A stretch of DNA of 64,000 nucleotides from Macrostomum lignano (Eukaryota), in contig NIVC01000593.1 in the NCBI GenBank assembly GCA_002269645.1, positions 119,454 through 183,453 of the forward strand. The letters run 5' to 3'. Every line of letters begins with the position of its first letter. The stretch's first letter is position 1. The notes beneath the pieces were generated by a model. That model made no database searches. It had not been told where the DNA came from and saw nothing but the letters and a program-made list of their open reading frames with translations. Made by a program: the position numbers and the translations under genes. This document shows, one piece after another, positions 1 to 63,981 of the stretch.

Positions 1-19219
<19,219 letters not shown>

Positions 19220-31258: not shown

Positions 31259-31323
31259 CAGCCAATCAGCGTCGAGGTGTTTCATTTATAACAAACTTCG
31301 GTCCAGTTGGCGGCTATAAAAAC
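31259..31323 (+). promoter_or_regulatory. CCAAT + TATA promoter-like arrangement
   Basis: CAGCCAATCAGC at about 31259 and CTATAAAAA at about 31315, followed by a GC-richer leader-like tract with no ORF. Confidence 0.35.
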
Positions 31324-35686: not shown

Positions 35687-35754
35687 GCCGAGCGTGCCGC
35701 TAAAAATTTCGCCGTCTAGGAGGGCAGCAGCTCTGCCTGAGGTTCTGATGTGGT

Positions 35755-38233: not shown

Positions 38234-38356
38234 CCTTACTGACTAGTAAAAAGCATCGTCAAAATTGGGTAAACAGCGAGAGTAACTGTACCCACATTTA
38301 TAAGCAAACCCGCCTCGTCATCTTATAAGTCTCACAAACTCAAGGCATTTTACTAG

Positions 38357-44300: not shown

Positions 44301-47300
44301 CGGCCTGCAGCAGCAGCTCGGCAACTTCGTAGTGACCGTAGCTGCAGGCGTTGTGCAACGGCACCAGGCCGCCTTTGTCCTTGGCGTGCACGTCGGCGCC
44401 GTGCTGCAGTAGGAGGCGAATTATCTTGGTCCGATTGTAGCCGGCGGCCAGGTGCAACGGCGACGATTTACGGCCGTCGCCGGCGTGACAATTCACGTTG
44501 ATTGGGGTCAGGTAGAGTCGCATAATCTCTTCGTTGCCGCTGCGCGAGGCTTCGAGGATTTCCTCTTTGCGGTAGTCGCCTGTGAAGGCAAAATGTTATG
44601 AGGATTGTTAACAGTGGGGATTAATAAAGATAATGTGCTGTGCTGAAGACAACAGCCTTCAGTTGTTGCTAGCATTTAAACTTTTAGACTTTTGACGAGG
44701 GTTTTCAGTCAATTGTGATTGCATCTCCGCGTTCCTTCTCGTGTTTGCATGTAACATCATGTCATATGTCAATTTTATGTTACGGTATTAATTTTAATAT
44801 ATCGAAAGATAAATTGTGGATCGTCATTTTGAGCGTTTTTGAGTAGCATTTAAGTTACCGCAGCGATTTACATTGAAAATTCTAAATAATCTTGACTCCC
44901 AATTCATTGGTCCCTGGATCCAAACCAAGGATTTCCGATCATTTCCAAGGCACTAAGATTCAGGCATTGAAAAATCGTTCTATTGTACAAAAATTAAGAA
45001 TGTATCAAGACTACATGGACGTCGTAATCCTGCGATTGTCAAGTTTCCAAGTGTCAAGAAGAGAGGAATCAAGGTGAGTAGCTTCACTAATTAATGATTC
45101 GTGCTTGAGTTTAATCGGTATCATAAGCGACAAAGAAATTCAGGCGTATTACTAAGGAAATTCTCGTGTACTAATGTAGTACAAAATCTTTAGTATCGAA
45201 AAAATTTCTATCGTCACAAATCTAATACTTTGCTCTTGACGTTCTGCAAAGTACAAGGAAAAATCTTTAAAATCGTTGATAAGAGTACAAAAAGATTTGC
45301 GTTAAGTCTAATTTGACCAGAGTAAGAGTTACAAATCCAATTCGTTCCACCCAATAGTGCAACAAGCACTCCGCTGTCTGTCTGTCTGTCTGCCTGACGG
45401 CCCTAATGTAGAACTTCTCCAGCTTCTGTCCAACCAACAGCCAGACAAATTTGGAGAAGTAAAAAATAGAGGAAACCTCAAGACTCGAGACGGCGCTGTC
45501 TGGTGGCTGGGGAATGCCAATAAAATGGCATTTGCATTTCATTTTGACCGGACTGGATAGCTGAGCCAAAGAGATCTCTACATAGATACTTGGAGCAATA
45601 ACAAAAATATGTTTTCTATATTGTTGGAATTATTCGTTGGCGGATTCTTAAGCTTTGTCCAAGGACGTCTTGGAGGACGTCCAAGATTAAGACGTCCTTC
45701 GTTTTGTCTTATTCATCGGATTGTTCTTTTAGAAAAAATATTTGATGCATGAGCTGGTATTACAACTTTATAGGAATGTCTTTTTGAAGCATTTGTTAAA
45801 AATTTTGTATAGAGTTTCAAGTCGACAGTGTTAAAGATGTAAGACGAGCGATTTTTTAGAAAGCAGTTTTTAATCCAGACTGTAGATTTCAATCTCCTTA
45901 GCCTGACAGACCGGTCTGGGCAACTTGACCGCCTTTTCCTCTCCTAGTCAATCAACACTGCCTTGTTGTATGTCGGCGCAGCAAAATGAAAGGAGCAAGA
46001 CTGGAGCGAACGAAGCAAATAGAGGGATGAGGCAGTTGGGCCTGCCTCTTCCCAGAGGGATCAGAAAATTGCATTTCATCTCTTGCTCAATCAGGAATAT
46101 AAAATCGAAGTCTGCAATTGTCTGTCTAAATGGTGTGCTCATCGTAGTCTGGAGATAACTTTCAGTTGATGATAAATCCTAGAACAGCGCAGAACAGCCA
46201 ATCAGCGACTGGAACGATTTCTCTTACATCAAATCCGATCATGACAAGCCTCGCATATTGATGATAGGCGCAGACTATGTATACGTGTGTATACATATGC
46301 ATGTATATGCAAAGAAAAAGCTAAAGCAATCTATAGACGCCTGTGTAAATTATCCAGCAGTGTGGGCGGCCTCGCGTGCGAGACGCGGGCCTTAACCCCC
46401 CCCCCCCCCGACCGATTCAAGTTGGGCCAGCATGGATAAGAGGGCAAGAAGGGGGATTTGCATCAACCCACCGAGTGGAGAAAAGAGTGCGCCACTTGTG
46501 CTTGCCAGCTAGCTCAGGAGCTGCTGGGCACGGAGAGAGACCGGGGAGTGCGGGAGAGGCAAAGATCGAGAGAAAGAGAGTTCATAGAGGCAAAGATGGG
46601 ATCCTTCGGTAAGACGAGGGCGAAGCCTCACTGAGGCATCCGTGGGCCCAGTGTGTGGGATTAGGGACCGGGATTATTCTAGCGCAGAACACCAAGAATG
46701 CGAGCACAAACTTCGCCAAAAAACACACTCGCGCAGACACACGCCGATCGGGCATCCGCCAATCCTCTTAGCGCCACCAATCTCACTTCAGCCACCCTGC
46801 TCCACTACTGTGGACTCAAAAAATCAGCCTTTCCAGCCTTCACAAGCTCCCCTTCAACATCATTCAAGAATAAAGAAAAATGAATGCACGCCCTCGTCTT
46901 AAGGCGGCAAGGGGAAGAGAGAGAAGACGCAGAGGAAGAGGAAAAGGAAAGAAAAATGGTCCACCCAGTGTCGATTGGATTGATGACGCTCTGGATGCTG
47001 GAATTGGGAATTGAGAATATGTGGACAGCAACCGAGAGTGGAGGCTGGCAGAGGCAACGGCGGCGACGGAAGGGCAGAGAAGAGAATGACGGAGGGTGGG
47101 GAAGGAGGGACAGTGAGTGGAGCATTGGCACTATTGGATTTGCCCAAGCGACCCATTCTCAAGCCGCCCCTACCCCGCCATCCAAGGCCTGCTTGAGCAG
47201 CCTCTTACCAATGGGTTCTCCCCTCACTTGCGCGCTCCAAGGGACCAGGGACAGGGAAGGGGGTCGAGAAATGGGGGATAAGGAAGCAGGGAGAGTGTGG

Positions 47301-48974
47301 GGAAACCAGAGCGAGGGATAGGGGGTGGGGTGAGAACAGGGGCAGGAGATGGAGATGCGGATAAAATAGACCAGGATCTCCGTCTTGCTTTGCTTTTCTT
47401 GGCTAGCTGAGATCTTCCCCCTAAAAAATTATCGAAATTTCTTCGGACTAAGATTAGCAGCAACAGCAATATGGGCCAACAAATGAGCGGCGAAGCCTAT
47501 TGCCGGGCCACCATAGAGAAGCTATTAGCCGAACTGAACACCACGGACAGTCGGGTCAGCGAGAGCAAAGTAATAAACTCAGACAGCGGCAACACGGCGG
47601 CGGTGTCGGTAGAATTCACCTGGCGCGAATGGGCCAGAGTTAGCAAATATCTGGAACGCGTGCTGCCAAGCGCGGAGCAGAAGCGCTTATTAAACTATGT
47701 GCTATTAGATCGGACGGGACTGCGGCACTGTCGGGAAGAGGCAGCCGCGGCGCCAGCGGAATACAACTATTCTGAGACCGAGACCCAGAGCCCAGTTGAG
47801 AACGGGCACGCGGGCAACAGCGCCAAGCCCGGCTGGACGGTGCACGTCAACTATGGCGACGTTGGCAGCAAGAATCCCATTCTATATCGGGACTTTGTTA
47901 AACTGCACTTCCAACTAGACGACGTAAAATTGCAGACGGACGCAGGCGAAGCCGAGGCCGAGGCCGCGGCGAATCGGCTGGCCGATTCTGTCAAGCGACG
48001 TTGCGGCGGCATCGGCATCAACCTGCTGGTGACCAAGGCAAAGCACCACGCCAGCGAGTGTTGCGTCGTAGTCAGTGGCACAGTCGACGTTCGATCCGTG
48101 CTGCGCAACGCGCAACAATTCGAGCTGCGTAGCTGGCTAAATCAGGCCAAAGCCGAGGATCAGGAGCTGTCCGATCAGCTGATGCGATCGGCGGCCGGGC
48201 TGCGCGATAAAATCGACGGAGCTGCGTCGGCCGCAGCGGCGGCAGCGGCAGCATCGGTTTCGACACCGCCGGCAGCGGCTGAAACTGACAACCCGACGCC
48301 GCCGGCGCCACGGTCGTCCAGAGCTGCAACTGCCGCAACAGCGGCTGCAGCGGCGGCGACGGCGGCTAAACAGGTGGACAGCAACAACCGGTACTTCCCG
48401 ATGCGGCTGAGCTACTCCGAGGACACTAACCGGGTGACGCTGGTGTACGCGCAGGAGGCGGCCACGCTAGTGCAGGCCCGGGCCGGGCGTTGAATTGACG
48501 CACAAAAAAAACAGATTCTATCCAAGTTATGCGGATTTTTATCAATACGAGCTAATGATTTTTCAATGCTAATCACTATACATACAGGTATTATTATTTG
48601 TGTGACGCGAAAGACAATTACTCTGCCTATCTGTCGTGAAATAGTATCCGTTTTACTGTTATCTTTGTTTTAAAACGCTAATCTTCGCATTCTAATAGAA
48701 CTGGAGCAGCTCCTTTAAAAAGCAATTAAAATTTAGAAACATCCGGATATCAGCTCAGTGAAATGACTTTCTGAACTACAAGCGTATGCTATTATACCGC
48801 TGACATTGTTTGACACTGCTAAAGTACTCAAATAAGAGCCACCACTTGGTTTGCATATATTTGTCCTAGTGTTTTAGTGTCTTGTGTCTGTCTGCCTGCC
48901 TGTCTGTCTGTCTGTATGTCTGTCTGCCTGCCTGCCTGTCTATGTGTCTGTCTGTCTTTCTGTCTGTCTGTCTT

Positions 48975-49037
<63 letters not shown>

Positions 49038-51695
49038 GCCTGCCTGCCTGCCTGCCTGTCTGTCTGTCTGTCTATGTGTCTGTCTGTCTGTCTATGTGCC
49101 TGTCTGTCTTTCTGTCTGTCTGTCTGTCTGTCTTTATGTGTCTGTCTGTCTGTCTGTCTGTCTTGTGTCTGTCTGCCTGCCTGTCTGTCTGTCTGTCTTG
49201 TGTCTGTCTGCCTGCCTGTCTGCCTGCCTGTCTGTCTGTCTTGTGTCTGTCTGCCTGCCTGTCTGCCTGTCTGTCTGTCTGTCTTCCTGCCTGTCTGTCT
49301 TGTGTCTGTCTGCCTGCCTGCCTGCCTGCCTGCGATATGCATCAGATATCAGATCTATCAAGATGCATAGCTTCCTACTGGCCTAATTGATTCCATGATA
49401 ACTAAGACAGTCCAAGTTTAGAACATGTCTTCTGAGTATCGTGTGACACAAAGCCGGACATGATTACCGGACTACGACAGGAAGTGACTACTGTATAGCC
49501 AGCCATTTCTGCTCCCTTCAACACAGGAAGTATGGCCACTCCGTTATCTATACAAATAATAGTGATGCATTACTAAGACAAATTAGACGAGAAAGTATGT
49601 TTAAAATAAGTGGAAGATTACACACTAGCTACTAATTTGATCAGTAGTAAAAATGCGAAATAAAAACGGAAATTAAACATTTTAAAAAAATAAGAAATCT
49701 CCAGAATGACTTGAAATTGGTTTAAAATAAGTGCCTGATGAGATGCTAGGATGCATGGCTCAAAAGAGAATGTGTTGTCGGTGCTTCACTGTTTCAAGGC
49801 CAACTATTTTTCTTATAGAAGCATTATTTGATAGTCGCACTTTTTGCTAATTTGCTAGTTAGCGACTGTCTGCGGCGCCAAAATGAGTGCCCTGCCTGCG
49901 GCGCCAAAATGAGTGCCCTGTCTGCGGCGCCAAAATGAGTGCTCTGCCTGCGGCGCCAAAATGAGTGCCCTGCCTGCGGCGCCAAAAAGAGTGAGTGCTC
50001 TGCCTGCGGCGCCAAAATGAGTGCTCTGCCTGCGGCGCCAAAATGAGTGCCCTGCCTGCGGCGCCAAAATGAGTGAGTGCTCTGCCTGCGGCGCCAAAAT
50101 GAGTGCCCTGCCTGCGGCGCCAAAATGAGTGCCCTGTCTGCGGCGCCAAAATAAGTTCCCTGTCTGCGGCGCCAAAATGAGTGCCCTGTCTGCGGCGCCA
50201 AAATGAGTTCCCTGCCTGCGGCGCCAAAATGAGTGCGCTGTCTGCGGCGCCAAAGTGAGTGCCCTGCCTGCGGCGCCAAAATGAGTGCCTGCCTGCGGCG
50301 CCAGAGTGCCCTGTCTGCGGCGCCAAAATGAGTGCTCTGCCTGCGGCGCCAAAATGAGTGAGTGCTCTGCCTGCGGCGCCAAAATGAGTGCCCTGCCTGC
50401 GGCGCCAAAATGAGTGCCCTGTCTGCGGCGCCAAAATGAGTGCCCTGTCTGCGGCGCCAAAATGAGTTCCCTGCCTGCGGCGCCAAAAAGAGTGAGTGCT
50501 CTGCCTGCGGCGCCAAAATGAGTGCTCTGACTGCGGCGCCAAAATGAGTGCCCTGCCTGCGGCGCCAAAATGAGTGAGTGCTCTGCCTGCGGCGCCAAAA
50601 TGAGTGCCCTGTCTGCGGCGCCAAAATAAGTTCCCTGTCTGCGGCGCCAAAATGAGTGCCCTGTCTGCGGCGCCAAAATGAGTTCCCTGCCTGCGGCGCC
50701 AAACTGAGTTCCCTGCCTGCGGCGCCAAAATGAGTGCCTGCCTGCGGCGCCAAAATGAGTGCCCTGCCTGCGGCGCCAAAATGAGTTCAAATAAAACCGT
50801 TTCTCAAAACAGAATCCAGGAATTTATTCATGCAGAATTCTTGGCTCTGTCAACTGAGCACAACTAGAGCTTCACAACCCAGGCAAGGTGTCCCAACGCC
50901 TATCCAAAAATGACAAAACACCCCGCAGGTAGATTAGTCTCCTAAAAGCTTACCAGTGAGCACCTGTCTGGCCTCAACCTCGGCCAAGTCGAGCGGCGTC
51001 CGACCTTCGGCATTCCTAGCGGACGGATCCGCTTTCCGCTGCAGCAGCAGCAGGCAGGCCTCCAGTTTACCCTTGGCGGCGGCCTCGTGCAACGGCGTGT
51101 AGCCCCAGTTGTCCTTCAGATTAGGATCGGCGCCGGAGTCCAACAGCAGATTGACAACGTCGCAGTGGCCAAATGAGCAGGCATTGTGCAGCGGCACCAG
51201 GCCGCCTTCGTCGCGCGCGTTAACCGGAGCGCCGCTCTGCAGCAGGGCGGCGGCAACGTCGCGTCGACCGAAGCCGGAGGCGAAGTGCAGCGGAGTGCTG
51301 CCCTGGCCAGCTGGGTCGCGAGCCAGGGCGCTGTGACCCATCGCTAGCAGCCGCTTGACCCGAGCCAGGTCGCCAGCTCGACAGGCTTCGAACAGGTCCG
51401 GCGAGGCGGCCGACTCCAGACTGCTGGCACCAGTGGCGGCGGAGGATGGCGCGTGCTGCTGTTGTTGCTGCGGCTGCAGCAGTGGCGGCGGCGAAGGTGG
51501 CAGCGTTGGGGGCAGCGGCGACGGTGGAGTCAGCGTGATCAACTGCTCCGATGGCGGCGGAGTAGCGCCACTTGGAGTGGCGCTGCCCGACACTGTGCGC
51601 GCGCCAGTTGGCATGGCGCTGCACAGCGGAGCAGCGGAATGTTCCAATGATTGATGGCGTATTTTACCATATTTGCCGTAGGATCCCGTAGCCAT
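38357..51695 (-). CDS. TNKS: Tankyrase (ankyrin repeat clusters 1-5, SAM, PARP catalytic domain), complete
   Basis: Five exons: 50954-51695, 44062-44579, 41693-43150, 40076-40933, 38357-38854. Total 4074 nt, 1357 aa. It has the repeated [12 protein letters not shown] / [16 protein letters not shown] / [12 protein letters not shown] pattern and the SAM sequence [33 protein letters not shown]. The PARP domain has the H-Y-E triad ([26 protein letters not shown]) and the CHCC zinc motif ([12 protein letters not shown]). Confidence 0.97.
38930..40003. repeat. 23-bp minisatellite AACAATAGTTTAGGAGACATTCC (tankyrase intron 4)
   Basis: About 45 units, degenerate at the edges. Confidence 0.96.
41010..41560. 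repeat. 31-bp purine-rich minisatellite (tankyrase intron 3)
   Basis: About 18 units of GGAGATAAGAGAGGATAAGGAGGCCAGAAAG. Confidence 0.96.
43235..43885. repeat. 21-bp minisatellite AATCTTGGCGCTCCAATACCA (tankyrase intron 2)
   Basis: About 30 units, shifting along the array to AATCTTGGCGCCTCAATCACT variants. Confidence 0.95.
47471..48493 (+). CDS. Uncharacterised intronless 340-aa protein nested antisense in tankyrase intron 1
   Basis: A 1023-nt ATG-to-TGA ORF that is non-repetitive over most of its length. Its GC-rich codon style matches the real exons and contrasts with the AT-rich flanks. It begins MGQQMS (MGxxxS). I recognise no domain. Confidence 0.7.
   Translation: MGQQMSGEAYCRATIEKLLAELNTTDSRVSESKVINSDSGNTAAVSVEFTWREWARVSKYLERVLPSAEQKRLLNYVLLDRTGLRHCREEAAAAPAEYNYSETETQSPVENGHAGNSAKPGWTVHVNYGDVGSKNPILYRDFVKLHFQLDDVKLQTDAGEAEAEAAANRLADSVKRRCGGIGINLLVTKAKHHASECCVVVSGTVDVRSVLRNAQQFELRSWLNQAKAEDQELSDQLMRSAAGLRDKIDGAASAAAAAAAASVSTPPAAAETDNPTPPAPRSSRAATAATAAAAAATAAKQVDSNNRYFPMRLSYSEDTNRVTLVYAQEAATLVQARAGR
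48880..49335. repeat. (CTGT/CTGC)n microsatellite (tankyrase intron 1)
   Basis: Directly visible. Confidence 0.95.
49866..50850. repeat. 26-bp minisatellite (CTGCCTGCGGCGCCAAAATGAGTGCC) derived from the hAT MITE interior
   Basis: About 35 units of the MITE internal repeat. They are followed by ACCGTTTCTCAAAA...AGGAATTTATTCATG...AATTCTTGGCTCTGTC, which matches the sequence that follows the repeats in both MITE copies. Confidence 0.85.
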
Positions 51696-53250
51696 AGCTA
51701 CAGCTATGGCGGAACACTATATTATACTTGTTGTTAGATAAAAAATTACTTTTTTATTTACTTAAAAAAATTTAACCTTTCAAAAGTTCTACTATCATAA
51801 TACACTTCTACTGCCTACCTCTATTTTTGGCTATTTATTATAACTGATTGTTTAATTTGTTTAATAGCTACTTATAATCTTTGTACTAATTAGCATAGTG
51901 GTTATATCCAATATATATATATTGATATTATCTACCCAATTATAATAATAAATTAACTAGTCATTATTAGTCATTAAAATTAAATTAAGGATAGAATAAA
52001 AATATAGGAATAAAATAAAAAACTTCAAGCATAACTCTCTAGTAATATGCTTGAAAGCAAGGTTTTTACTAGCACTAAGAAGCAAAATTGTTGTATACAA
52101 AGTTTATTTTTAAGATGCAATTTGGTCCTTATTGCATAAAAAACCTAAAAAAAACTAACATAGGTTTTTTGCTAGTATTAGGATTCAAACTTATATCCAA
52201 GGTCTAATTGGAAAATGCAATTTTGAAAGTCAAGATGCTATTATGCTCCATACTCCCGAAGATGCTGTTTTGTGGGGAAAATTCTCGCGTGCAACAAATT
52301 CCCAGGCAGCCATGTGCGGCATGCACGGCGTGCAACCAAGAGGCAGAAATTATTTTAGCATGCGCCATGCAAATATTTTATTCACTCCGCGTTTTTGGTA
52401 ATGACAAGTTTTTTTTATTTTAAATTGAATGTCTTACAATAATAACACAATGTGCATAACGAGAGATCTTTCTGTGTATCTGCAATAAGGAAAACAATTT
52501 TTGCGTGAGGCAATACAATTTTCAGGCATTATAAAACAGTATATAATAAATACAAACTATAATATTTTGTCAAAGTGTTTTTTTTTTTCGTTTTTATTTG
52601 AAAGTGTGTCTTGCATTAATTATTCAATGCAAAGCTTACCACTTACATAGATAGATTGGTAGATCTAGATCCCTTGCTGCCACTCACCTGTCCTAGTTTA
52701 CTATGGATAGTTTCTTTTCTTTATTTGAATTTTAAATCTCTCATTAAAAATTAAATCTAAAAGATCTAAAATTTAAATTAAAAAATTTAAAGTCATTTAG
52801 CTCGGCGTGCATGGGGTGTATATGTGATTTGACCTCCCGTGTGCGGCGTGCAAGGGCAAAAATTATTTTTGCATGCATTAAGCATACTCGGGACTATGGA
52901 TTATGCTATACTCCTATAGATAGACTAGTATCTCTATTGCACAAAAAATATTATATTTTATTCAAGCAAAACCTAAAGTTATACCAGTCTCATTTTGGGT
53001 TTATACTATATAGTATATTATTGGCATAGCTATAAATATATACTTACTTTGTACACAAAGTTTGTTTGCCTTAGCCTTATATATTGCATATAGTCACATT
53101 ATATTTACCAAATATATAGACTGCAAGCCTCATTTATCAGTTTGGTTGCCAATTATTTATTTCTAAAGAATGTGGTGCTCTAGTGCATGTGATGGGTAGG
53201 TCATACTATTCATAAATAATAGTCCGAAAGTCGATAAGAGTGGAGCAGGC

Positions 53251-53276
53251 GTCGCCGCGGGGGCCGCGTCACTAGT
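53251..53276 (+). mobile_element. Probable Helitron 3' terminus
   Basis: A GC hairpin CGCGG-GGG-CCGCG is followed by TCA-CTAG-T, within an otherwise AT-rich tract. The 5' end was not identified. Confidence 0.4.
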
Positions 53277-55306
53277 TAAAATAACTCATGACTCTCGACT
53301 CAGGTAAGATTAATTTGGGTTCAGATAAGATGAATTACGAATATAAAATAATTGCATGTACAAATAGATACCTACAATATTTTTCGCGTATGTCAATAGT
53401 ATTCTTTTACACTTTTCGCTTTTTGCACAAACATAATTGTTCTGCGTAATATTTTTTCTCAATATTCTACGAAGCATTTCTGTTTTTAAAAAGATCCATG
53501 AGGAAATATTGTAACAGGCTATAACAAAAACGTATAATCTACTAAACAGGCAGTTGCTTCGTTTCGGAATAAATTATTTTTAATGTAATCATTTAATGAA
53601 TAAAAGAGATGAATTGTCAATTAATTCTCCAGGTATTACGGTCTATGTACAAGTATGATGATGCATGTTCTTATCGGGGCGCCACAAGATGGCGCAAAAC
53701 TTTTAAAGGACACGATAAAGTGTTCACGATGTTCCCTGGCAAAGAAAACTCTGGCTAAAATACTAGAGCGTGTATTTTTCTAATTATTGTTGAGTGCTCT
53801 TCAGTATCTCGGATTCACGTGGTCTATTGTATTGGCATTTGTGAGCATACAGTTACTTTACGTACATGTACCATGTACTCATACGCATGTATATGTAGAT
53901 GTATACGTACATGTATACGCTTATTGTAGAACATAATGAGGCATGAGCAATAATAATGAAAAATGCATTTTATTCTGCCATGTACGATTTATAACTGGGA
54001 GTTGTGTATTCATCCACAGCAATAGTATTCGCAGTAAAATGTTTATACGTTAGATTTGATTTATATTTTATAAAGCAACATCAAATTAGAACACGCAGAT
54101 TTTGTATTATTTTACAAAGCTATATTGTGCACTCACGGTGCCGCCACATAAGAATTAACTTCGTTTATAAAAACACGTAAATGTTTATAAACAGAGCAAG
54201 CAGATGCCACACAAAAATCTGGATGAAATTGGTTAGAAAAAAAGAACAATGAAGAAATAAAGAAATACCTGCTTTGAGTTCTAAGCCTTAAGACTGGTCT
54301 AGTCATAAGCAAAGAAAACTTTACATAGCCGAGATAGTCGTAGGAGTTTCTACCGATCCAAACTGAATAAGGAAATTTTCTGAAACTGTCACCTGGATTT
54401 CTGAATTCTTTGTCTGTGCTAGGTAAATTGTATTATACTTAATTAATTAGCGAAAAGTGAATACGTAGTGATTTATTCAATTTTAACTGCAGGGAAACAC
54501 ATGTCACAAATTTTGTACTTTTAGAAGCTTATACCTTTAAAATCCAGACAAAGCATGTATTGTATTGTTTTCAATAGGACATTAGTTTTAATGGATAGGG
54601 GTAATTATAGTACGCAATGTTATGCAATTGAAACGCAAACTATGTGCCACTGAGATCAATTACTCATATGCATATCGAACTATGTACTTATAGTGAAGTA
54701 TAATTTCCATAGCGAAACAATTACACAGAATTTCCTGCAAACTAACTAAATCCGTGCATTAATTTGTGCAGTGCGGGACAAGCTAGATGATTGGACAAAT
54801 CAAATACAGAGTAGGCAACAAAACAGATTGTTATTACAAGTAATAACAGTGCAGAAGGTTAGCAAATACACTTCAAATAAACAGTCATTTTTATTATATA
54901 CGAGTACTTACATAACTAGAGCGGGGAGTATTGTGAGCAGTTAGGTTTTTGTAACAACAGGTAGGATAATACGATATGCTGCTGCAATGCGTCACTCGCC
55001 TATACAGGATTGGGGTTATATTGCACAGGGGCCAAGCCAGTGATCTGGATTCTAGCGGGCTCAGTCTTAGAAATCTATTACACCATATTAATATAAAAAC
55101 AACGAAAGAAAAACGCTGAAAACGCAAAGATGCCAAACAAATATGAGAAGTTACAACATGAAAATGTTGTTAAACAGTTGATAATAAGAGACACACAGAT
55201 TAATCAGCCATGCTTTAATTTTCAATGAAAATCAACTATCAGACAGATAAAATTGCACCTATTATGATTGGTAATAAAATCAAGTCTACTAGATACCCAG
55301 ATCTCA

Positions 55307-58300
55307 TCAAGCCGCTGAACTCCCAGCGGCTGCCGATGCTGTCGCAACGTCATGCGCCGGTTCCGTATTGATCTCTTGAAGCTGATTCCGCGGCCGCTTC
55401 TCGCTTGGCGGTCCCGAATCTGACCAGTCCCCATCTCCAATCCCTGCGGCATCTTCCATAGCAGCTTCGGCCTCGTCTGCAGCCGCGATTCGTCGTTTCA
55501 CGGCGCTGGCAGTCTGGTCAGGATCAGGAGGCGACGTGTCTTCCTGCACAACGTCAGCTTCGTTGCTATTAGTGTCGCCGTTCGCCGTAGTCACTTCGTC
55601 GGCAGCCGAATCTATCGATGGCGACGCCGCCGAGGCCGCAAAAGATTCGGCCTCGGCGGCGGGAATTCGACGCGGCTGTTGCAGCTTTCTGGCGCATTTT
55701 TCACGCCGTTTGCGCGCCTCAAGCAGTTCAAGAATGGCTGCAGGCTTGCCGCCGCCAGTCACTGGTGGAGCAACCGACGCGGGCGCCTCCTCAGACTGCT
55801 GCTGCGCCTCTTTGTCTGATGACTCAACAGCGCCGTCGTGTCTGACACCGCCGTTATTATTGTTCTCCTCATCGTCATCATCGTCGCTCAGCACGACAAC
55901 CATATCGGGAGGCACCGCTGCTGGCCTCTCGGGTGTTGGACACGGAGCTTGGCGCTGCGCCTGAATGCTGCGACGTTGCTGCGCTTGCTGCTGCTGCTGC
56001 TGATGGCGCGACACGACCGGCCCTGCTGACTGATGAATAATAGGCTGTGCAGGAGGCGCCGGCCGAGACTGCGGAATCCGCAGACCTGGCTGGTGCACGG
56101 GTCGCGAAACGGTCGCAGCCGAAGGCCCAGTTAAATCGATCACGGATCCTCTGGTTTTGCCACTCCTGCGCTGGGCGTGCTTATCCTCCTCGGCGATAAG
56201 GCTGCGCAGTTTGCCAAGCCGTAGGAACAGGTGCATCCGGTAGGCGCTTTTAAATCGGGATACAATCTGCGACTTGTCTGCAAGAGTAGTGGCGGCAGTG
56301 AGATCCTGCATGAACCGGCTGTATTGGCGCATCATACCCTGCAATAGGGACACTGTGGCATTAAGCGCTGTGCCAATATTGCGCACGTCAACGGATTCGA
56401 TGTCGGATAGGATTGTCTCTATGCGAACATTCTGCTTGTACCACAGCTCGGTGCGCTGGGTGACACTAGCTTGGCCGGCAGCTGTTGCTGGCGCCGCTAC
56501 CTGCTGCGGCTGCTGCTGCCGCCGTTGCTGTTGCTGCATCTGTTGCAATTGCTGCAATTGCTGACGATTGTGCAGCTGCGAGCCAACCTGATTGTGCTGC
56601 TGGGTCAACTGCCGATGCGGTTGCAGAGGCTGATTACCTACAGTAGTGGACGCCGACGGCATCCTAGAAGTGACTTTTGGCACCGAACTCAAATCCAGCT
56701 GCATGCCAGCAATGGTGGCGTTGCTAGTAACGCCAACTCCGCCGCGAACGCTGCCGTAGGCGATTGCTGGAGTTGCAGCGACTAGAACTGGCAGCTGGGC
56801 TTGACGGATCGTCTGCAGCTGGGGCAGTGGCAGAGGCTGCAGCTGCAGTGGCGCCGAGTTAGGAGGAGCAGGTGCGGCAACCGTTTTCTTTGCTTGGGCC
56901 ACTTTCTGCTTCTCAGAGCGTTTGCTTGCCTCCTGAAAGCGTTAAAGCAAATCGGATTAGTTAGTATAGTATTTAATTGAAAGGAAATCATTGCAGAGCT
57001 CTATATGTTTCCCCCCTCTCTTCCCTTCCCAGTCCCTCTCTTTCGGGTCTCCGACTCTCCGTCTCTCCCTTCCTGTTTGCCTCCTATCTAGTCCAACCTT
57101 TCCATCTAGTCTAACCCTTTCCGTCTCCATCTAGTCTAGCCCATCCTGTCTCCATCTAGTCTAACCCTTCCTGTCTCTATCTATTCTAACCCTTCCTGTC
57201 TCCATCTATTCTAACCCTTCCTGTCTCCATCTATTCTAACCCTTCCTGTCTCTATCTAGTCTAACCCTTCCTGTCTCCATCTAGTCTAGCTTATCCTGTC
57301 TCCATCTAGTCTAACCCTCCCTGTCTCTATCTATTCTAACCCTTCCTGTCTCCATCTATTCTAACCCTTCCTGTCTCTATCTAGTCTAACCCATCCTGTC
57401 TCCATCTAGTCTAACCCTTCCTGTCTCTATCTATTCTAACCCTTCCTGTCTCCATCTAGTCTAGCTTATCCTGTATCCATCTAGTCTAACCCTCCCTGTC
57501 TCTATCTATTCTAACCCTTCCTGTCTCCATCTAGTCTAACCCTTCCTGTCTCTATCTATTCTAACCCATCCTGTCTCCATCTAGTCTAACCCTTCCTGTC
57601 TCTATCTATTCTAACCCTTCCTGTCTCCATCTAGTCTAACCCTTCCTGTCTCTATCTATTCTAACCCTTCCTGTCTCCATCTAGTCTAACCCTTCCTGTC
57701 TCTATCTAGTCTAGCCCATCCTGTCTCCATCTAGTCTAGCCCATCCTGTCTCCATCTAGTCTAGCCCATCCTGTCTCCATCTAGTCTAGCCCATCCTGTC
57801 TCTATCTAGTCTAGCCCATCCTGTCTCCATCTAGTCTAGCCCATCCTGTCTCCATCTAGTCTAACCCTTCCTGTCTCCATCTAGTCTAACCCTCCCTGTC
57901 TCTATCTATTCTAACCCTTCCTGTCTCCATCTATTCTAACCCTTCCTGTCTCTATCTAGTCTAACCCTTCCTGTCTCCATCTAGTCTAACCCTTCCTGTC
58001 TCCATCTAGTCTAACCCTTCCTGTCTCTATCTAGTCTAACCCTTCCTGTCTCCATCTAGTCTAACCCTTCCTGTCTCTATCTATTCTAACCCTTCCTGTC
58101 TCCATCTAGTCTAACCCTTCCTGTCTCTATCTAGTCTAGCCCATCCTGTCTCCATCTAGTCTAGCCCATCGGCCATCCTGTCTCCATCTAGTCTAACCCT
58201 TCCTGTCTCTATCTAGTCTAACCCTTCCTGTCTCCATCTAGTCTAACCCTTCCTGTCTCTATCTAGTCTAGCCCATCCTGTCTCCATCTAGTCTAGCCCT

Positions 58301-61300
58301 TCCTGTCTCCATCTAGTCTAGCCCATCCTGTCTCCATCTAGTCTAGCCCATCCTGTCTCCATCTAGTCTAACCCATCCTGTCTCCATCTAGTCTAACCCT
58401 TCCTGTCTCCATCTAGTCTAACCCTCCCTGTCTCTATCTATTCTAACCCTTCCTGTCTCCATCTATTCTAACCCTTCCTGTCTCTATCTAGTCTAACCCT
58501 TCCTGTCTCCATCTAGTCTAACCCTTCCTGTCTCCATCTAGTCTAACCCTTCCTGTCTCTATCTAGTCTAACCCTTCCTGTCTCCATCTAGTCTAGCCCA
58601 TCCTGTCTCCATCTAGTCTAGCCCATCCTGTCTCCATCTAGTCTAACCCTTCCTGTCTCCATCTAGTCTAACCCTTCCTGTCTCTATCTATTCTAACCCT
58701 TCCTGTCTCCATCTATTCTAACCCTTCCTGTCTCCATCTATTCTAACCCTTCCTGTCTCTATCTAGTCTAACCCTTCCTGTCTCCATCTAGTCTAGCTTA
58801 TCCTGTCTCCATCTAGTCTAACCCTCCCTGTCTCTATCTAGTCTAGCCCATCCTGTCTCCATCTAGTCTAGCCCATCCTGTCTCCATCTAGTCTAGCCCA
58901 TCCTGTCTCCATCTAGTCTAACCCTTCCTGTCTCTATCTATTCTAACCCTTCCTGTCTCCATCTATTCTAACCCTTCCTGTCTCCATCTATTCTAACCCT
59001 TCCTGTCTCTATCTAGTCTAACCCTTCCTGTCTCCATCTAGTCTAGCTTATCCTGTCTCCATCTAGTCTAACCCTCCCTGTCTCTATCTATTCTAACCCT
59101 TCCTGTCTCCATCTATTCTAACCCTTCCTGTCTCTATCTAGTCTAACCCATCCTGTCTCCATCTAGTCTAACCCTTCCTGTCTCTATCTATTCTAACCCC
59201 TCCTGTCTCCATCTAGTCTAGCTTATCCTGTATCCATCTAGTCTAACCCTCCCTGTCTCTATCTATTCTAACCCTTCCTGTCTCCATCTAGTCTAACCCT
59301 TCCTGTCTCTATCTATTCTAACCCATCCTGTCTCCATCTAGTCTAACCCTTCCTGTCTCTATCTATTCTAACCCTTCCTGTCTCCATCTAGTCTAACCCT
59401 TCCTGTCTCTATCTATTCTAACCCTTCCTGTCTCCATCTAGTCTAACCCTTCCTGTCTCTATCTAGTCTAGCCCATCCTGTCTCCATCTAGTCTAGCCCA
59501 TCCTGTCTCCATCTAGTCTAGCCCATCCTGTCTCCATCTAGTCTAGCCCATCCTGTCTCTATCTAGTCTAGCCCATCCTGTCTCCATCTAGTCTAGCCCA
59601 TCCTGTCTCCATCTAGTCTAACCCTTCCTGTCTCCATCTAGTCTAACCCTCCCTGTCTCTATCTATTCTAACCCTTCCTGTCTCCATCTATTCTAACCCT
59701 TCCTGTCTCTATCTAGTCTAACCCTTCCTGTCTCCATCTAGTCTAACCCTTCCTGTCTCCATCTAGTCTAACCCTTCCTGTCTCTATCTAGTCTAACCCT
59801 TCCTGTCTCCATCTAGTCTAACCCTTCCTGTCTCTATCTATTCTAACCCTTCCTGTCTCCATCTAGTCTAACCCTTCCTGTCTCTATCTAGTCTAGCCCA
59901 TCCTGTCTCCATCTAGTCTAGCCCATCGGCCATCCTGTCTCCATCTAGTCTAACCCTTCCTGTCTCTATCTAGTCTAACCCTTCCTGTCTCCATCTAGTC
60001 TAACCCTTCCTGTCTCTATCTAGTCTAGCCCATCCTGTCTCCATCTAGTCTAGCCCTTCCTGTCTCCATCTAGTCTAGCCCATCCTGTCTCCATCTAGTC
60101 TAGCCCATCCTGTCTCCATCTAGTCTAACCCATCCTGTCTCCATCTAGTCTAACCCTTCCTGTCTCCATCTAGTCTAACCCTCCCTGTCTCTATCTATTC
60201 TAACCCTTCCTGTCTCCATCTATTCTAACCCTTCCTGTCTCTATCTAGTCTAACCCTTCCTGTCTCCATCTAGTCTAACCCTTCCTGTCTCCATCTAGTC
60301 TAACCCTTCCTGTCTCTATCTAGTCTAACCCTTCCTGTCTCCATCTAGTCTAGCCCATCCTGTCTCCATCTAGTCTAGCCCATCCTGTCTCCATCTAGTC
60401 TAACCCTTCCTGTCTCCATCTAGTCTAACCCTTCCTGTCTCTATCTATTCTAACCCTTCCTGTCTCCATCTATTCTAACCCTTCCTGTCTCCATCTATTC
60501 TAACCCTTCCTGTCTCTATCTAGTCTAACCCTTCCTGTCTCCATCTAGTCTAGCTTATCCTGTCTCCATCTAGTCTAACCCTCCCTGTCTCTATCTAGTC
60601 TAGCCCATCCTGTCTCCATCTAGTCTAGCCCATCCTGTCTCCATCTAGTCTAGCCCATCCTGTCTCCATCTAGTCTAGCCCATCCTGTCTCTATCTAGTC
60701 TAGCCCATCCTGTCTCCATCTAGTCTAGCCCATCCTGTCTCCATCTAGTCTAACCCTTCCTGTCTCTATCTATTCTAACCCTTCCTGTCTCCATCTATTC
60801 TAACCCTTCCTGTCTCCATCTATTCTAACCCTTCCTGTCTCTATCTAGTCTAACCCTTCCTGTCTCCATCTAGTCTAGCTTATCCTGTCTCCATCTAGTC
60901 TAACCCTCCCTGTCTCTATCTATTCTAACCCTTCCTGTCTCCATCTATTCTAACCCTTCCTGTCTCTATCTAGTCTAACCCATCCTGTCTCCATCTAGTC
61001 TAACCCTTCCTGTCTCTATCTATTCTAACCCTTCCTGTCTCCATCTAGTCTAGCTTATCCTGTATCCATCTAGTCTAACCCTCCCTGTCTCTATCTATTC
61101 TAACCCTTCCTGTCTCCATCTAGTCTAACCCTTCCTGTCTCTATCTATTCTAACCCATCCTGTCTCCATCTAGTCTAACCCTTCCTGTCTCTATCTATTC
61201 TAACCCTTCCTGTCTCCATCTAGTCTAACCCTTCCTGTCTCTATCTATTCTAACCCTTCCTGTCTCCATCTAGTCTAACCCTTCCTGTCTCTATCTAGTC

Positions 61301-63981
61301 TAGCCCATCCTGTCTCCATCTAGTCTAGCCCATCCTGTCTCCATCTAGTCTAGCCCATCCTGTCTCCATCTAGTCTAGCCCATCCTGTCTCTATCTAGTC
61401 TAGCCCATCCTGTCTCCATCTAGTCTAGCCCATCCTGTCTCCATCTAGTCTAACCCTTCCTGTCTCCATCTAGTCTAACCCTCCCTGTCTCTATCTATTC
61501 TAACCCTTCCTGTCTCCATCTATTCTAACCCTTCCTGTCTCTATCTAGTCTAACCCTTCCTGTCTCCATCTAGTCTAACCCTTCCTGTCTCCATCTAGTC
61601 TAACCCTTCCTGTCTCTATCTAGTCTAACCCTTCCTGTCTCCATCTAGTCTAACCCTTCCTGTCTCTATCTATTCTAACCCTTCCTGTCTCCATCTAGTC
61701 TAACCCTTCCTGTCTCTATCTAGTCTAGCCCATCCTGTCTCCATCTAGTCTAGCCCATCGGCCATCCTGTCTCCATCTAGTCTAACCCTTCCTGTCTCTA
61801 TCTAGTCTAACCCTTCCTGTCTCCATCTAGTCTAACCCTTCCTGTCTCTATCTAGTCTAGCCCATCCTGTCTCCATCTAGTCTAGCCCTTCCTGTCTCCA
61901 TCTAGTCTAGCCCATCCTGTCTCCATCTAGTCTAGCCCATCCTGTCTCCATCTAGTCTAACCCATCCTGTCTCCATCTAGTCTAACCCTTCCTGTCTCCA
62001 TCTAGTCTAACCCTCCCTGTCTCTATCTATTCTAACCCTTCCTGTCTCCATCTATTCTAACCCTTCCTGTCTCTATCTAGTCTAACCCTTCCTGTCTCCA
62101 TCTAGTCTAACCCTTCCTGTCTCCATCTAGTCTAACCCTTCCTGTCTCTATCTAGTCTAACCCTTCCTGTCTCCATCTAGTCTAGCCCATCCTGTCTCCA
62201 TCTAGTCTAGCCCATCCTGTCTCCATCTAGTCTAACCCTTCCTGTCTCCATCTAGTCTAACCCTTCCTGTCTCTATCTATTCTAACCCTTCCTGTCTCCA
62301 TCTAGTCTAACCCTTCCTGTCTCTATCTAGTCTAACCCTTCCTGTCTCCATCTAGTCTAACCCTTCCTGTCTCCATCTAGTCTAACCCTTCCTGTCTCTA
62401 TTTAGTCTAACCCTTCCTGTCTCCATCTAGTCTAACCCTTCCTGTCTCTATCTATTCTAACCCTTCCTGTCTCCATCTAGTCTAACCCTTCCTGTCTCTA
62501 TCTATTCTAACCCTTCCTGTCTCCATCTAGTCTAACCCTTCCTGTCTCTATCTAGTCTAGCCCATCCTGTCTCCATCTAGTCTAGCCCATCGGCCATCCT
62601 GTCTCCATCTAGTCTAACCCTTCCTGTCTCTATCTAGTCTAACCCTTCCTGTCTCCATCTAGTCTAACCCTTCCTGTCTCTATCTAGTCTAGCCCATCCT
62701 GTCTCCATCTAGTCTAGCCCTTCCTGTCTCCATCTAGTCTAGCCCATCCTGTCTCCATCTAGTCTAGCCCATCCTGTCTCCATCTAGTCTAACCCATCCT
62801 GTCTCCATCTAGTCTAACCCTTCCTGTCTCCATCTAGTCTAACCCTCCCTGTCTCTATCTATTCTAACCCTTCCTGTCTCCATCTATTCTAACCCTTCCT
62901 GTCTCTATCTAGTCTAACCCTTCCTGTCTCCATCTAGTCTAACCCTTCCTGTCTCCATCTAGTCTAACCCTTCCTGTCTCTATCTAGTCTAACCCTTCCT
63001 GTCTCCATCTAGTCTAGCCCATCCTGTCTCCATCTAGTCTAGCCCATCCTGTCTCCATCTAGTCTAACCCTTCCTGTTTCCCTCCCATCTAGTCTAGACT
63101 TCCTGTCTTTGCCTTCCCATTCCTGTCTCCCTCATACGACTACGAGCCTTTCTATTCCTGTCTACTCGCTGACCTCCCCTTGCCCCCCTCTTTTGTCCCC
63201 AAGCTTCTAGAAAAAAAACAACGTACCAGAAAGTGCTCTTTAACAGTTTTAATAACAACAACGGCTTCCTCCTGTAGGTGCCGTAGTGAGCTCTGATCGC
63301 AGGCGTAGCAAAGCCAAACAGACTCGTCCGGCAAGCTTTCAATATCCTGCAGAGCGCTGCGACCAAGATTGCGTTTAATACAAGTGCGACAGAATGAATG
63401 CTCGCAATTGTCGCAGCAGATTAATGAGCCGCCTTCGCCGCACCAGCGACACTGATTCTCTTTGCCCTGCTCGTCCGAGTCGAAGTGGCCAGACGCGTAG
63501 AATTTATAGCATTTCTGGCACACCAACACTTTTAGTAGCGGATGCACCTGAATGAAGATGGAAAAACAAACTTTTGACTTTTGAGTAGTATTCACTAAGT
63601 AGTAGATAACAGTTTTAAAGTGAAAAAAATTTATTGCACACTTACATCCATAGTGCCATTGTAAGGATTGACTTTCTTTCCACAAGCGGTGCACTTAACG
63701 GTGTCGTAAATTCCTGGCGCGGCGCATCGAGCACCGGACGAGGCCTGATCGAAGCAGGCAACTTGGCTATTGCCAGTCTCAGCAACGGCTTCCGGTTGCA
63801 CAACCACAGTGCCGTCCTCCAATTGCTGCTGGCCTTGACCATTAATTATAGTAGTAGTCAGAGTAGGCGTTTGGGGCTGCGACAGTGGCTCAGGCAACTG
63901 AGGCGCAACTAACGTTGCCTCAGTATTGTCTTCCTCCTCACTGTTTGCCACGCGCCGAATCGCGCACTGCTTGGTTCGCAT
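55307..63981 (-). CDS. ATRX-like ADD-domain protein lacking the SNF2 helicase (dADD1-like architecture)
   Basis: Exons 63646-63981, 63227-63547 and 55307-56932 are all phase 0 (about 760 aa). The ADD domain reads VKCTACGKKVNPYNGTMD|VHPLLKVLVCQKC...NQCRWCGEGGSLICCDNCEHSFCRTCIKRNLG...WLCYAC and aligns with the ATRX GATA-like + PHD fingers. The ORF ends in TGA TGA at 55307. The 5' end may extend beyond the window. Confidence 0.85.
57085..63075. repeat. 6-kb 25-bp satellite (CCATCTAGTCTAACCCTTCCTGTCT) with kb-scale higher-order repeat, intron 2 of the ADD gene
   Basis: About 240 units. Marker variants recur at spacings of 1757, 1832 and 832 bp. Confidence 0.97.

What the first reader, a model, noticed from the sequence alone, without database searches (positions are those of the whole stretch)
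55307..63981. ATRX ADD domain in a stand-alone gene with no helicase: a possible independent split of ATRX
Seen: a full ATRX-type ADD domain, then one long exon ending in TGA TGA. The 3.6 kb to the next gene (tankyrase) is AT-rich and has no SNF2-like ORF. Known: vertebrate ATRX carries the ADD (H3K9me3/H3K4me0 reader) and the SNF2 helicase in one polypeptide; Drosophila splits them into dADD1 and XNP; C. elegans XNP-1 lacks ADD. Inference: this lineage encodes a separate ADD reader of about 760 aa with its own C-terminus, and a helicase-only XNP should exist elsewhere. That would be a non-insect case of ATRX fission or ADD-only duplication.
Basis: partly seen in the sequence, partly recalled or inferred. 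Interest (0 to 1): 0.82.

Follow-up and report, generated by a model that had tools for sequence, protein, structure and literature searches.

The report
Stand-alone ATRX reader gene in flatworm
In the flatworm Macrostomum lignano, the histone-reading front part of the chromatin remodeller ATRX is encoded by its own complete gene with no helicase attached, which looks like a second split of ATRX, separate from the one known in insects, although the matching helicase gene could not be located here.

Summary
A three-exon gene lies on the minus strand (63981..63646, 63547..63227, 56932..55307). It encodes 760 aa with a full ATRX-type ADD domain and ends in TGA TGA. A 3.6-kb AT-rich spacer and then tankyrase follow it.

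The window is Macrostomum lignano contig NIVC01000593.1. The gene is already annotated from transcript data as hypothetical protein BOX15_Mlig004496g3 (PAA80198.1).

The protein matches, from its first residue, the N-terminal ~530 aa of the fused ADD+SNF2 ATRX models of trematodes. The shared order is MRKKQ start, L-DGT-VV-P motif, ADD, helical hairpin, IDLT motif. Mollusc and vertebrate ATRX are also fused, so the stand-alone state is derived and is not the insect event.

No SNF2 sequence exists in the 64-kb window or around four other M. lignano copies. An unidentified relative with conserved synteny has the same stand-alone architecture. Duplicate copies show pN/pS 0.18.

The M. lignano helicase gene was not located, so "fission" cannot yet be told from "ADD-only duplicate beside a fused copy". 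Verdict: real gene, a new instance of the dADD1/XNP-type split, moderately interesting.

The parts
63646..63981 (-). Exon 1 (aa 1-112). Holds the ATG at 63981, the N-terminal MRTKQ start, the LEDGTVVVQPE motif (aa 54-64, 63790..63822) and the first CxxC of the GATA-like zinc finger (C97, C100).
   Evidence: The N-terminus aligns from residue 1 with Opisthorchis ATRX. The motif is nearly invariant across flatworm ATRX and has pLDDT 62-75.
63548..63645 (-). Intron 1, 98 nt, GTAAGT...TTCAG.
63227..63547 (-). Exon 2 (aa 113-219). Holds the rest of the GATA-like finger (H114, C122, C125), the aromatic pocket residues F128/Y129, the acidic loop, and the PHD-like finger (C145, C148, C157, C160, C165, C168, C192, C195).
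56933..63226 (-). Intron 2, 6294 nt. Almost all of it is a 25-bp tandem repeat of 238 copies (57101..63081).
   Evidence: The same intron is 1959 nt in duplicate loci L001/L002.
55307..56932 (-). Exon 3 (aa 220-760 plus stop). It holds the end of the long ADD C-terminal helix, a Gln-rich disordered linker, the helical hairpin module, two SIM-like motifs, an acidic tail, the EKRPR basic motif, and TGA TGA.
56162..56449 (-). Conserved helical module (aa 381-476: ELWYKQN...SRFKSAYRMHLFLRLGKLRSLIAEE). It is predicted to form a helical hairpin.
   Evidence: BLASTP to the same position in trematode ATRX gives E=9e-9 and 1.3e-8. The alignment is. pLDDT is 70-87.
56126..56146 (-). SVIDLTG motif (aa 482-488), SIM-like. 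It is conserved as (V/T/S/F)IDLT in flatworm ATRX and in the L004 relative.
   Evidence: The SIM reading is an inference.
55865..55903 (-). MVVVLSDDDDDEE (aa 563-575), a hydrophobic core followed by an acidic run, SIM-like. It is conserved as IVVLSD in the paralogue and as IVLLSDDDE in the L004 relative.
   Evidence: The function is inferred.
55382..55402 (-). EKRPRNQ basic motif near the C-terminus, NLS-like. The counterparts are HKRSRPQ in the paralogue and PKKSRLSS in the L004 relative.
   Evidence: The function is inferred.
51696..55306 (-). 3' UTR plus intergenic spacer, 32-34% GC, with no coding potential. Poly(A)-like hexamers lie 88 nt and 412 nt after the stop (55219 and 54895).

Best explanation
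This is a functional, separately transcribed gene that encodes only the chromatin-targeting N-terminal part of ATRX.

Shown:
- Its order of modules is the MRKKQ start, the L-DGT-VV-P motif, the ATRX-type ADD, a helical hairpin and an IDLT motif. These line up one-to-one with the N-terminal ~530 aa of the 2100-2200-aa fused ATRX models of trematodes.
- After these modules it has its own disordered acidic tail, a basic motif and a stop codon.
- No helicase exons lie downstream.

Inferred:
- In the macrostomid lineage the ancestral fused ATRX gene was split, or the front half was separated and moved away from the helicase half.
- The protein reads the histone H3 tail (unmodified K4 plus K9me3) through its ADD.
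- It uses its helical module and SIM-like motifs to bring partners to heterochromatin, probably including a separately encoded ATRX/XNP helicase. This would mirror dADD1 with XNP in Drosophila, and the truncated ATRXt isoform in mammals.
For: Gene model and ADD identity:
- The gene model and stop codon are read directly from the sequence.
- The locus is identical to the transcriptome-based GenBank annotation. Its 'g3' label marks the third gene of a transcriptional unit cut using trans-splicing and poly(A) data. Gene-specific poly(A) evidence was not seen.
- The ADD is ATRX-type by sequence and by fold.

Collinearity with fused ATRX:
- The profile search aligns profile positions 55-621 to residues 52-629 of the 2202-aa Paragonimus ATRX, whose SNF2 domain is at 1298-1612.
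- BLASTP aligns residues 1-244 to 1-253 of Opisthorchis ATRX (E=9e-50) and the helical module to the same position (E~1e-8).
- Fused ATRX also occurs in Clonorchis, Calicophoron, Mytilus, Haliotis, Babylonia and vertebrates.
- In Echinococcus multilocularis the SNF2 gene starts 760 bp downstream of the ADD gene.

No helicase near any copy:
- There is no SNF2 sequence in the 64-kb window, in +-10 kb around two duplicate loci and two paralogue loci, or in the relative's contig. A fused control locus (L006-L008) was detected by the same probes.

Conservation:
- An unidentified relative (L004) has the same stand-alone architecture and keeps the ubiquitin-like upstream neighbour.
- In an NJ tree of the ADD, M. 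lignano plus L004 form a clade (76% bootstrap) beside the neodermatan ATRX clade. That sister placement itself is unsupported.
- pN/pS is 0.18 between duplicate copies and all copies have intact ORFs.

Histone-pocket residues:
- The residues equivalent to human H189, Y203 (here Phe), Y204, D212, D217 (here Glu), Q219 and R246 are kept (residue roles from PMC12900699).
Against: - The M. lignano helicase gene was never found. The two helicase searches list only the best 120 hits and none is from M. lignano. A trans-acting partner, and the absence of a fused copy, are therefore both assumed.
- No RNA reads were examined directly. Transcript support is indirect, through the published annotation pipeline.
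- Human E252 and E218, which contribute to H3K9me3 binding, are Ala177 and Asn143 here. K9me3 specificity is therefore uncertain.
- The 'fused' trematode proteins are gene predictions. For Paragonimus kellicotti and Echinococcus granulosus the same locus is annotated as separate pieces, so the ancestral flatworm state may be 'adjacent' rather than strictly 'fused'.
- Homology of the helical module to the vertebrate post-ADD helices is not significant (hhalign E=0.05).
Confidence: 0.62

Rival explanations
1. Partial duplication. M. lignano still has a full-length fused ATRX elsewhere. This gene, its near-identical copies and its paralogue are ADD-only duplicates that lost or never had the helicase part. 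They would act like a hard-wired version of the mammalian ATRXt isoform.
For: - The helicase gene was not located, so a fused copy is not excluded.
- The genome is highly duplicated, with at least three near-identical copies plus a paralogue pair at 68% ADD identity. The publication reports extensive redundancy (PMC5730564).
- The protein database searches could have missed a fused copy, either through the apparent length limit in the search for homologous proteins or because it was never annotated.
Against: - The exhaustive profile search of 1.84 billion representatives returned as M. lignano hits only the ADD-only proteins. Its highest-ranked long hits that I could name came from other species: trematodes, Nematostella, Mytilus and Babylonia.
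- Both paralogue families and the L004 relative are ADD-only with a conserved own C-terminus. The stand-alone form is therefore old and constrained.
Confidence: 0.22
2. Annotation or assembly artefact. The gene is really the 5' part of a fused ATRX whose helicase exons are far away, unassembled, or joined by unusual splicing.
For: - Split gene models of truly fused ATRX are common in other genomes. Examples are Aldrovandia G00281220/G00281210, Echinococcus granulosus versus E. canadensis, and Paragonimus kellicotti versus P. heterotremus.
Against: - Exon 3 is one open frame of 541 codons that runs into TGA TGA.
- The tail and stop are conserved in three contigs, in the paralogue and in another species.
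- The next gene on the same strand is a complete tankyrase, in two independent contigs of 157 kb and 521 kb.
- No SNF2 sequence lies in the 55 kb downstream.
- The annotation pipeline cuts gene boundaries with trans-splice and poly(A) data.
Confidence: 0.06
3. Decaying remnant or pseudogene of the ATRX N-terminus with no function of its own.
For: - About 60% of the protein is predicted to be disordered, and the tail has no detectable homologues outside macrostomid-like sequences.
Against: - All five M. lignano copies examined and the L004 relative have intact ORFs.
- pN/pS is 0.18, with synonymous changes also prevailing in the tail (8 synonymous against 3 nonsynonymous in aa 589-757).
- All zinc ligands and the short motifs are conserved.
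Confidence: 0.03

Closest known systems
Drosophila dADD1 (CG8290), the ADD-only partner of the helicase-only XNP/dATRX (Lopez-Falcon et al. 2014, PMC4249797; review PMC10671109)
   Same: Both are stand-alone genes encoding an N-terminal ATRX-type ADD with no SNF2 domain. dADD1 is interpreted as the product of an ATRX gene fission and is reported to bind H3K9me3 and to work with XNP and HP1a.
   Different: - The phylum differs (Platyhelminthes versus Insecta). Flatworm and mollusc relatives are fused, so the events are independent.
- There are no MADF domains here (Pfam).
- This protein keeps the flatworm-ATRX helical module and the IDLT motif.
- Neither a partner helicase nor any interaction has been shown here.
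Fused ATRX of trematodes (for example Paragonimus heterotremus KAF5400000.1, 2202 aa; Opisthorchis felineus TGZ66706.1, 2115 aa)
   Same: The N-terminal ~530 aa are collinear with this protein: MRKKQ start, L-DGT-VV-P motif, ADD, helical module and IDLT motif.
   Different: The trematode proteins continue through a ~700-aa linker into SNF2 and Helicase_C domains. The M. lignano protein ends after a 280-aa tail of its own, and no helicase is nearby.
Echinococcus ATRX locus (E. multilocularis CDS41068.1, 518 aa ADD gene, plus the adjacent 1502-aa SNF2 gene)
   Same: The ADD part is annotated as its own gene and has the same module order.
   Different: The SNF2 gene lies 760 bp downstream on the same strand, and the two are merged into one 1935-aa model in E. 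canadensis. In M. lignano the two parts are physically unlinked.
Mammalian ATRXt, the truncated ADD-containing, helicase-less splice isoform of ATRX (PMC13074095)
   Same: It is an ADD-bearing ATRX product that lacks the helicase, and it is reported to localise to heterochromatin.
   Different: ATRXt is an isoform of the fused gene, not a separate gene. Here the helicase-less product is the only product the locus can encode.
DNMT3A/3B/3L ADD domains
   Same: They share the GATA-like plus PHD zinc-finger fold.
   Different: The match is far weaker (26 bits against 115; TM 0.58-0.61 against 0.91). There is no methyltransferase domain.

Membership tests
ATRX-type ADD domain (Pfam PF17981 plus PHD-like finger) | GATA-like C4 zinc finger (human C171, C174, C197, C200) | tested here: met
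   C97, C100, C122 and C125 align to the human ligands. They are invariant in the 10-sequence flatworm alignment.
ATRX-type ADD domain (Pfam PF17981 plus PHD-like finger) | PHD-like finger with eight Cys ligands binding two zinc ions | tested here: met
   C145, C148, C157, C160, C165, C168, C192 and C195 are all present and aligned.
ATRX-type ADD domain (Pfam PF17981 plus PHD-like finger) | Single globular fold with a long C-terminal helix; closer to ATRX than to DNMT3 | tested here: met
   AF2 pLDDT is >90 for aa 92-235. Foldseek gives 3qln TM 0.91, rmsd 1.5 A, E=5e-15, against DNMT3A TM 0.58, E=2e-5. phmmer gives 115 bits against 26 bits.
ATRX-type ADD domain (Pfam PF17981 plus PHD-like finger) | Residues that read H3K9me3 and unmodified K4 (human H189, Y203, Y204, D212, D217, E218, E252) | tested here: inconclusive
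   Kept: H114, F128 (for Y203), Y129, D137, E142 (for D217). Changed: E218 to N143 and E252 to A177 (residue roles from PMC12900699). Binding was not measured.
Full-length ATRX/XNP (SNF2 remodeller) | SNF2-related ATPase and Helicase_C domains in the same polypeptide | tested here: not met
   Pfam finds only ADD_ATRX. There is no tblastn helicase match in the window or in the other M. lignano loci.
Orthologue of the ATRX N-terminus | Collinear similarity outside the ADD to bona fide ATRX proteins | tested here: met
   The N-terminus, the L-DGT-VV-P motif, the helical module and the IDLT motif are collinear with trematode ATRX. Similarity of the module to vertebrate ATRX is not significant.
dADD1-type split ATRX (ADD gene plus separate helicase gene) | ADD encoded by a separate gene with its own stop and 3' end | tested here: met
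   Shown by the stop codon, the spacer and the tankyrase neighbour. The transcript-based annotation agrees.
dADD1-type split ATRX (ADD gene plus separate helicase gene) | A helicase-only ATRX/XNP gene elsewhere in the same genome | not testable with these tools
   The M. lignano genome cannot be searched by similarity here. The protein searches listed only the best 120 hits and none was from M. lignano. A planarian helicase-only cDNA product, DjXnp, does exist.
dADD1-type split ATRX (ADD gene plus separate helicase gene) | Physical or functional interaction with the helicase and HP1 | not testable with these tools
   This needs co-immunoprecipitation or pull-down experiments.
dADD1-type split ATRX (ADD gene plus separate helicase gene) | MADF domains (isoforms b and c, Drosophila genus only) | tested here: not met
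   There is no MADF hit in Pfam. The feature is not universal in the family (PMC4249797).
DNMT3-type ADD | Best similarity to DNMT3 ADD, with a cytosine methyltransferase domain | tested here: not met
   DNMT3 hits score E~1e-4 against 2e-32 for ATRX. No methyltransferase domain is found.

The most novel reading that the evidence does not exclude
ATRX may have been split more than once within flatworms, through a stepwise route that spliced-leader trans-splicing makes easy. The proposed steps are: a fused gene (trematode models); then two adjacent same-strand cistrons 760 bp apart (the cestode annotation); then unlinked genes (Macrostomum, and possibly planarians, whose DjXnp cDNA product is helicase-only). 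The M. lignano ADD gene is itself labelled as the third gene of a multi-gene transcriptional unit. M. lignano, which can be made transgenic, would then be a second animal, after Drosophila, in which the two halves can be studied separately.
Probability: 0.3. Interest if true: 0.55.

Novelty: new member of a known kind. Interest (0 to 1): 0.42.

Why it matters
ATRX mutations that cause disease cluster in the ADD and in the helicase. The only published evolutionary survey I found places that fission within insects (PMC4249797).

A second, independent natural split in a regenerating, transgenesis-capable flatworm would have two uses. It would show that the two halves can work as separate polypeptides more generally. 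It would also give a stem-cell-rich model in which to test each half alone.

On the practical side, these M. lignano proteins are auto-named 'DNA helicase' in UniRef although they have no helicase domain. That label should not be propagated.

Tried and rejected
- **Finding the M. lignano helicase.** Only the best 120 hits are listed and none is from M. lignano. That tool also appears to ignore candidates longer than about 1.75 times the query.
- **Supplementary tables of the M. lignano papers.** One GO-list mention of an 'ATRX' homologue turned up in a proliferating-cell gene list. It cannot be assigned to the ADD gene or to the helicase gene. The genome paper's supplements had nothing.
- **Literature search.** 'ATRX' with 'Macrostomum' gave nothing relevant. 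The accession numbers of the unidentified relatives gave nothing.
- **Helical module versus vertebrate ATRX.** The profile-profile test against the vertebrate post-ADD helices gave E=0.05 and probability 1%, so homology is not established.
- **C-terminal tail (aa 520-760).** It has no significant match to the trematode linker or helicase, so the breakpoint could not be mapped.
- **P0132.** Looking up contigs for this AT-rich flatworm-like ADD protein found no record.
- **DNMT3-type ADD.** Rejected.
- **Pseudogene.** Rejected.
- **MADF or any other Pfam domain.** Rejected. The only other Pfam hit was a sub-threshold TPR_CCP1_N match at E=0.08.

Full report
**What is there.** On the minus strand, an ATG at 63981 opens a three-exon gene. 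An in-frame TAA lies 9 nt upstream of that ATG. The exons are 63981..63646, 63547..63227 and 56932..55307. The introns have canonical GT..AG ends and all junctions are phase 0. The spliced CDS is 2283 nt and encodes 760 aa. It ends in TGA at 55309-55307, followed directly by a second TGA.

Intron 2 is 6294 nt and is almost entirely a 25-bp tandem repeat in 238 copies (57101..63081). This explains the uniform skewed composition of 57-63 kb. The 3611 bp after the stop has 32-34% GC and only short, meaningless ORFs.

**Where it comes from.** The protein is 99% identical to GenBank proteins of the free-living flatworm Macrostomum lignano. An identical-length 760-aa entry is PAA80198.1, BOX15_Mlig004496g3. 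Its annotated gene spans 8675 bp on contig NIVC01000593.1 of assembly GCA_002269645.1. An 18,694-base stretch of the window matches that contig exactly.

The gene is therefore already annotated, but only as a hypothetical protein. UniRef calls it a 'PHD-type domain-containing protein', and for older partial models, wrongly, a 'DNA helicase'. The annotation was built from RNA-seq-guided assemblies, with gene ends cut by spliced-leader and poly(A)-tag data. The suffix g3 marks the third gene of a transcriptional unit, after a kinase and a ubiquitin-like gene. This is indirect transcript support for a separate mRNA. I did not see reads for this gene itself.

**The ADD domain.**
- Pfam finds ADD_ATRX at E=3.5e-14.
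- Against solved structures, residues 88-210 match the human ATRX ADD at E=2e-32 and 115 bits. DNMT3B reaches only 26 bits.
- All twelve zinc-ligand cysteines are in place.
- An AlphaFold2 model built on a ten-sequence flatworm alignment gives pLDDT >90 for aa 92-235. It superposes on the free ATRX ADD crystal structure with TM 0.91 and rmsd 1.5 A. DNMT3 ADDs reach TM about 0.6.
- Of the residues reported to matter for H3K9me3 and K4me0 reading (PMC12900699), the equivalents of H189, Y203 (here Phe), Y204, D212, D217 (here Glu), Q219 and R246 are kept. E218 is Asn and E252 is Ala.
- H3-tail binding is therefore likely, but its methyl-specificity is open.

**It is the front part of ATRX, not just any ADD protein.** A profile of this protein, its paralogue and one relative was run against 1.84 billion representative proteins. 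After the M. lignano entries, the best hits were flatworm ATRX proteins (names).

Paragonimus heterotremus KAF5400000.1 is 2202 aa. It aligns over residues 52-629 to profile positions 55-621 and carries SNF2 and Helicase_C domains at 1298-1923. Opisthorchis, Clonorchis and Calicophoron have equivalent fused models of 2115-2223 aa.

The sequences show the same order of elements:
- an MRKKQ start;
- an L-DGT-VV-P motif about 35 residues before the ADD;
- the ADD;
- a helical module (...SFQSIYRFHLFARL... in trematodes, ...RFKSAYRMHLFLRL... here);
- a (V/T)IDLT motif.

BLASTP aligns residues 1-244 here to residues 1-253 of Opisthorchis ATRX (E=9e-50). It also aligns the helical module to the same position in two trematodes (E about 1e-8). 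The module is predicted to be a helical hairpin with pLDDT 70-87.

In a neighbour-joining tree of the ADD alone, the M. lignano genes and the relative form a clade with 76% bootstrap. It sits beside the neodermatan ATRX clade (75%), though that sister placement itself is unsupported. DNMT3B lies outside.

**No helicase anywhere near.** I used two ATRX helicase probes. The other was the Paragonimus helicase.
- Neither finds anything at E<=0.01 in the 64-kb window.
- Neither finds anything in +-10 kb around two near-identical duplicate loci and two paralogue loci of M. lignano.
- Neither finds anything in the relative's 12.5-kb contig.
- The same probes do find SNF2 exons 0.3-0.9 kb after the ADD exon in a control locus from an unidentified eukaryote (L006-L008).

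The next gene on the same strand is a complete tankyrase. Its ANK repeats start at 51695, its SAM domain is at about 40.5 kb and its PARP domain at about 38.5 kb. The same neighbour follows the gene on a second contig of 157 kb.

By contrast, in Echinococcus multilocularis the SNF2 gene begins 760 bp after the ADD gene on the same strand. In E. canadensis the two are merged into one model.

**The stand-alone form is conserved and constrained.**
- M. lignano has at least three near-identical copies and a paralogue pair (68% identical in the ADD). All are ADD-only with the same module order.
- A contig from an unidentified organism (ENA ERZ25070786, L004) keeps the ubiquitin-like upstream neighbour.
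- That contig encodes the same architecture: ADD, module, FIDLT, IVLLSDDDE, a basic PKKSR motif and a stop. This mirrors SVIDLTG, VVVLSDDDDDEE and EKRPR in the window gene.
- Between the window copy and a duplicate copy there are 14 synonymous and 8 nonsynonymous differences, giving pN/pS 0.18. Synonymous changes also predominate in the tail. The counts are small.

**Comparison with what is known.** The only published account of an ATRX split that I found places a single fission within insects, giving dADD1 and XNP. It infers a fused ancestor of plants and animals (PMC4249797). Here the fused state is seen in trematode models, in mollusc RefSeq models (Mytilus californianus 1954 aa; Haliotis and Babylonia with ADD plus SNF2) and in vertebrates. 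The flatworm stand-alone gene therefore cannot share the insect event.

It resembles dADD1 in being an ADD-only gene derived from the ATRX N-terminus. It differs in lacking MADF domains and in keeping flatworm-ATRX modules. Mammals make a comparable helicase-less product, ATRXt, by alternative processing (PMC13074095). A planarian helicase-only product, DjXnp (1076 aa, Q868M6), exists. This hints that free-living flatworms more generally may keep the two halves apart, but its 5' completeness was not checked.

**What remains unproven.** I could not search the M. lignano genome by similarity, and the two protein searches with helicase queries listed only their best 120 hits. Three claims are therefore inferences:
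- that a helicase-only XNP exists in M. lignano;
- that no fused copy persists;
- that the ADD protein works with the helicase in trans.

The SIM-like and NLS-like readings of the short motifs are also inferences, drawn from their sequence and conservation. The trematode 'fused' proteins are themselves gene predictions. Some sister species have split models of the same locus.

**Verdict.** The finding is a real, already-annotated but uncharacterised gene. It is a new, independent instance of a known kind of arrangement (the dADD1/XNP-type split). It is of moderate interest for chromatin evolution and offers a potential experimental handle in a transgenic flatworm model.

Noticed in passing
window 57101..63081 (intron 2 of the ADD gene); L001 10756..12714: A 25-bp minisatellite (TCCATCTAGTCTAACCCTTCCTGTC, 238 copies, 91% matches) fills the intron and gives it a strong strand skew. 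The same intron is only 1959 bp in the near-identical duplicate loci, so the array length differs about four-fold between copies, or was collapsed in assembly.
   Followed up: partly
window 1..49000: More than 20 different short-unit tandem arrays (units of 4-75 bp, up to 1.3 kb each) sit in introns and intergenic DNA across the window. Nearly every non-coding interval has its own array.
   Followed up: no
window 38357..51695 (-): This is a complete tankyrase gene with ANK repeats, SAM and a PARP catalytic domain. Its first intron holds a 26-bp array (49866..50786) that produces spurious ORFs of about 300 aa in three frames.
   Followed up: partly
window 24026..24967 (+) and 13117..14631 (-): Further genes lie in the window: a WDR35/IFT121-like beta-propeller exon and a spectrin-repeat exon.
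   Followed up: no
P0002, P0003, P0131 (UniRef entries of M. lignano): UniRef names these ADD-only proteins 'DNA helicase' although none has a helicase domain. The label was evidently inherited from ATRX-family membership.
   Followed up: partly
L012 (Echinococcus multilocularis LN902841.1) 10001..21918: The ADD gene (518 aa) and the SNF2 gene (1502 aa) are annotated separately, 760 bp apart on the same strand. The E. canadensis model joins them into 1935 aa. Whether cestodes make one mRNA or two is unresolved.
   Followed up: partly
P0294 (Dugesia japonica DjXnp, Q868M6): The planarian XNP cDNA product is 1076 aa with SNF2 and Helicase_C but no ADD. Planarians may therefore also keep the two halves apart. 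The 5' completeness of the cDNA was not checked.
   Followed up: no
L005 4896..6506 (GCA_013332635.1, organism not identified): An intronless 536-aa ADD-only protein (P0006) carries a Lys/Ala/Pro-rich, histone-H1-like tail. It is another stand-alone ATRX-type ADD gene from an unknown non-flatworm-looking source.
   Followed up: no
L011 (Logan SRR8856672 contig) 29..4852: A 1607-aa ATRX-type helicase (P0296) has a long Ser/Lys/Asp-rich N-terminus, starts with Met and has no ADD. The contig looks like a transcript. The organism is unknown.
   Followed up: no
L010 1334..7206 (upstream of the window end): The ADD gene is labelled g3 of a transcriptional unit whose g1 is a protein kinase and whose g2 is a ubiquitin-domain protein. 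The g2-to-ADD order is conserved in the unidentified relative L004. This suggests an operon-like unit resolved by trans-splicing.
   Followed up: partly
PMC5173321, Figure 1-source data 3: A M. lignano transcript whose best human match is ATRX appears under GO 'DNA modification' in one of the proliferating-cell gene lists. It cannot be told whether this is the ADD gene or the helicase gene.
   Followed up: partly
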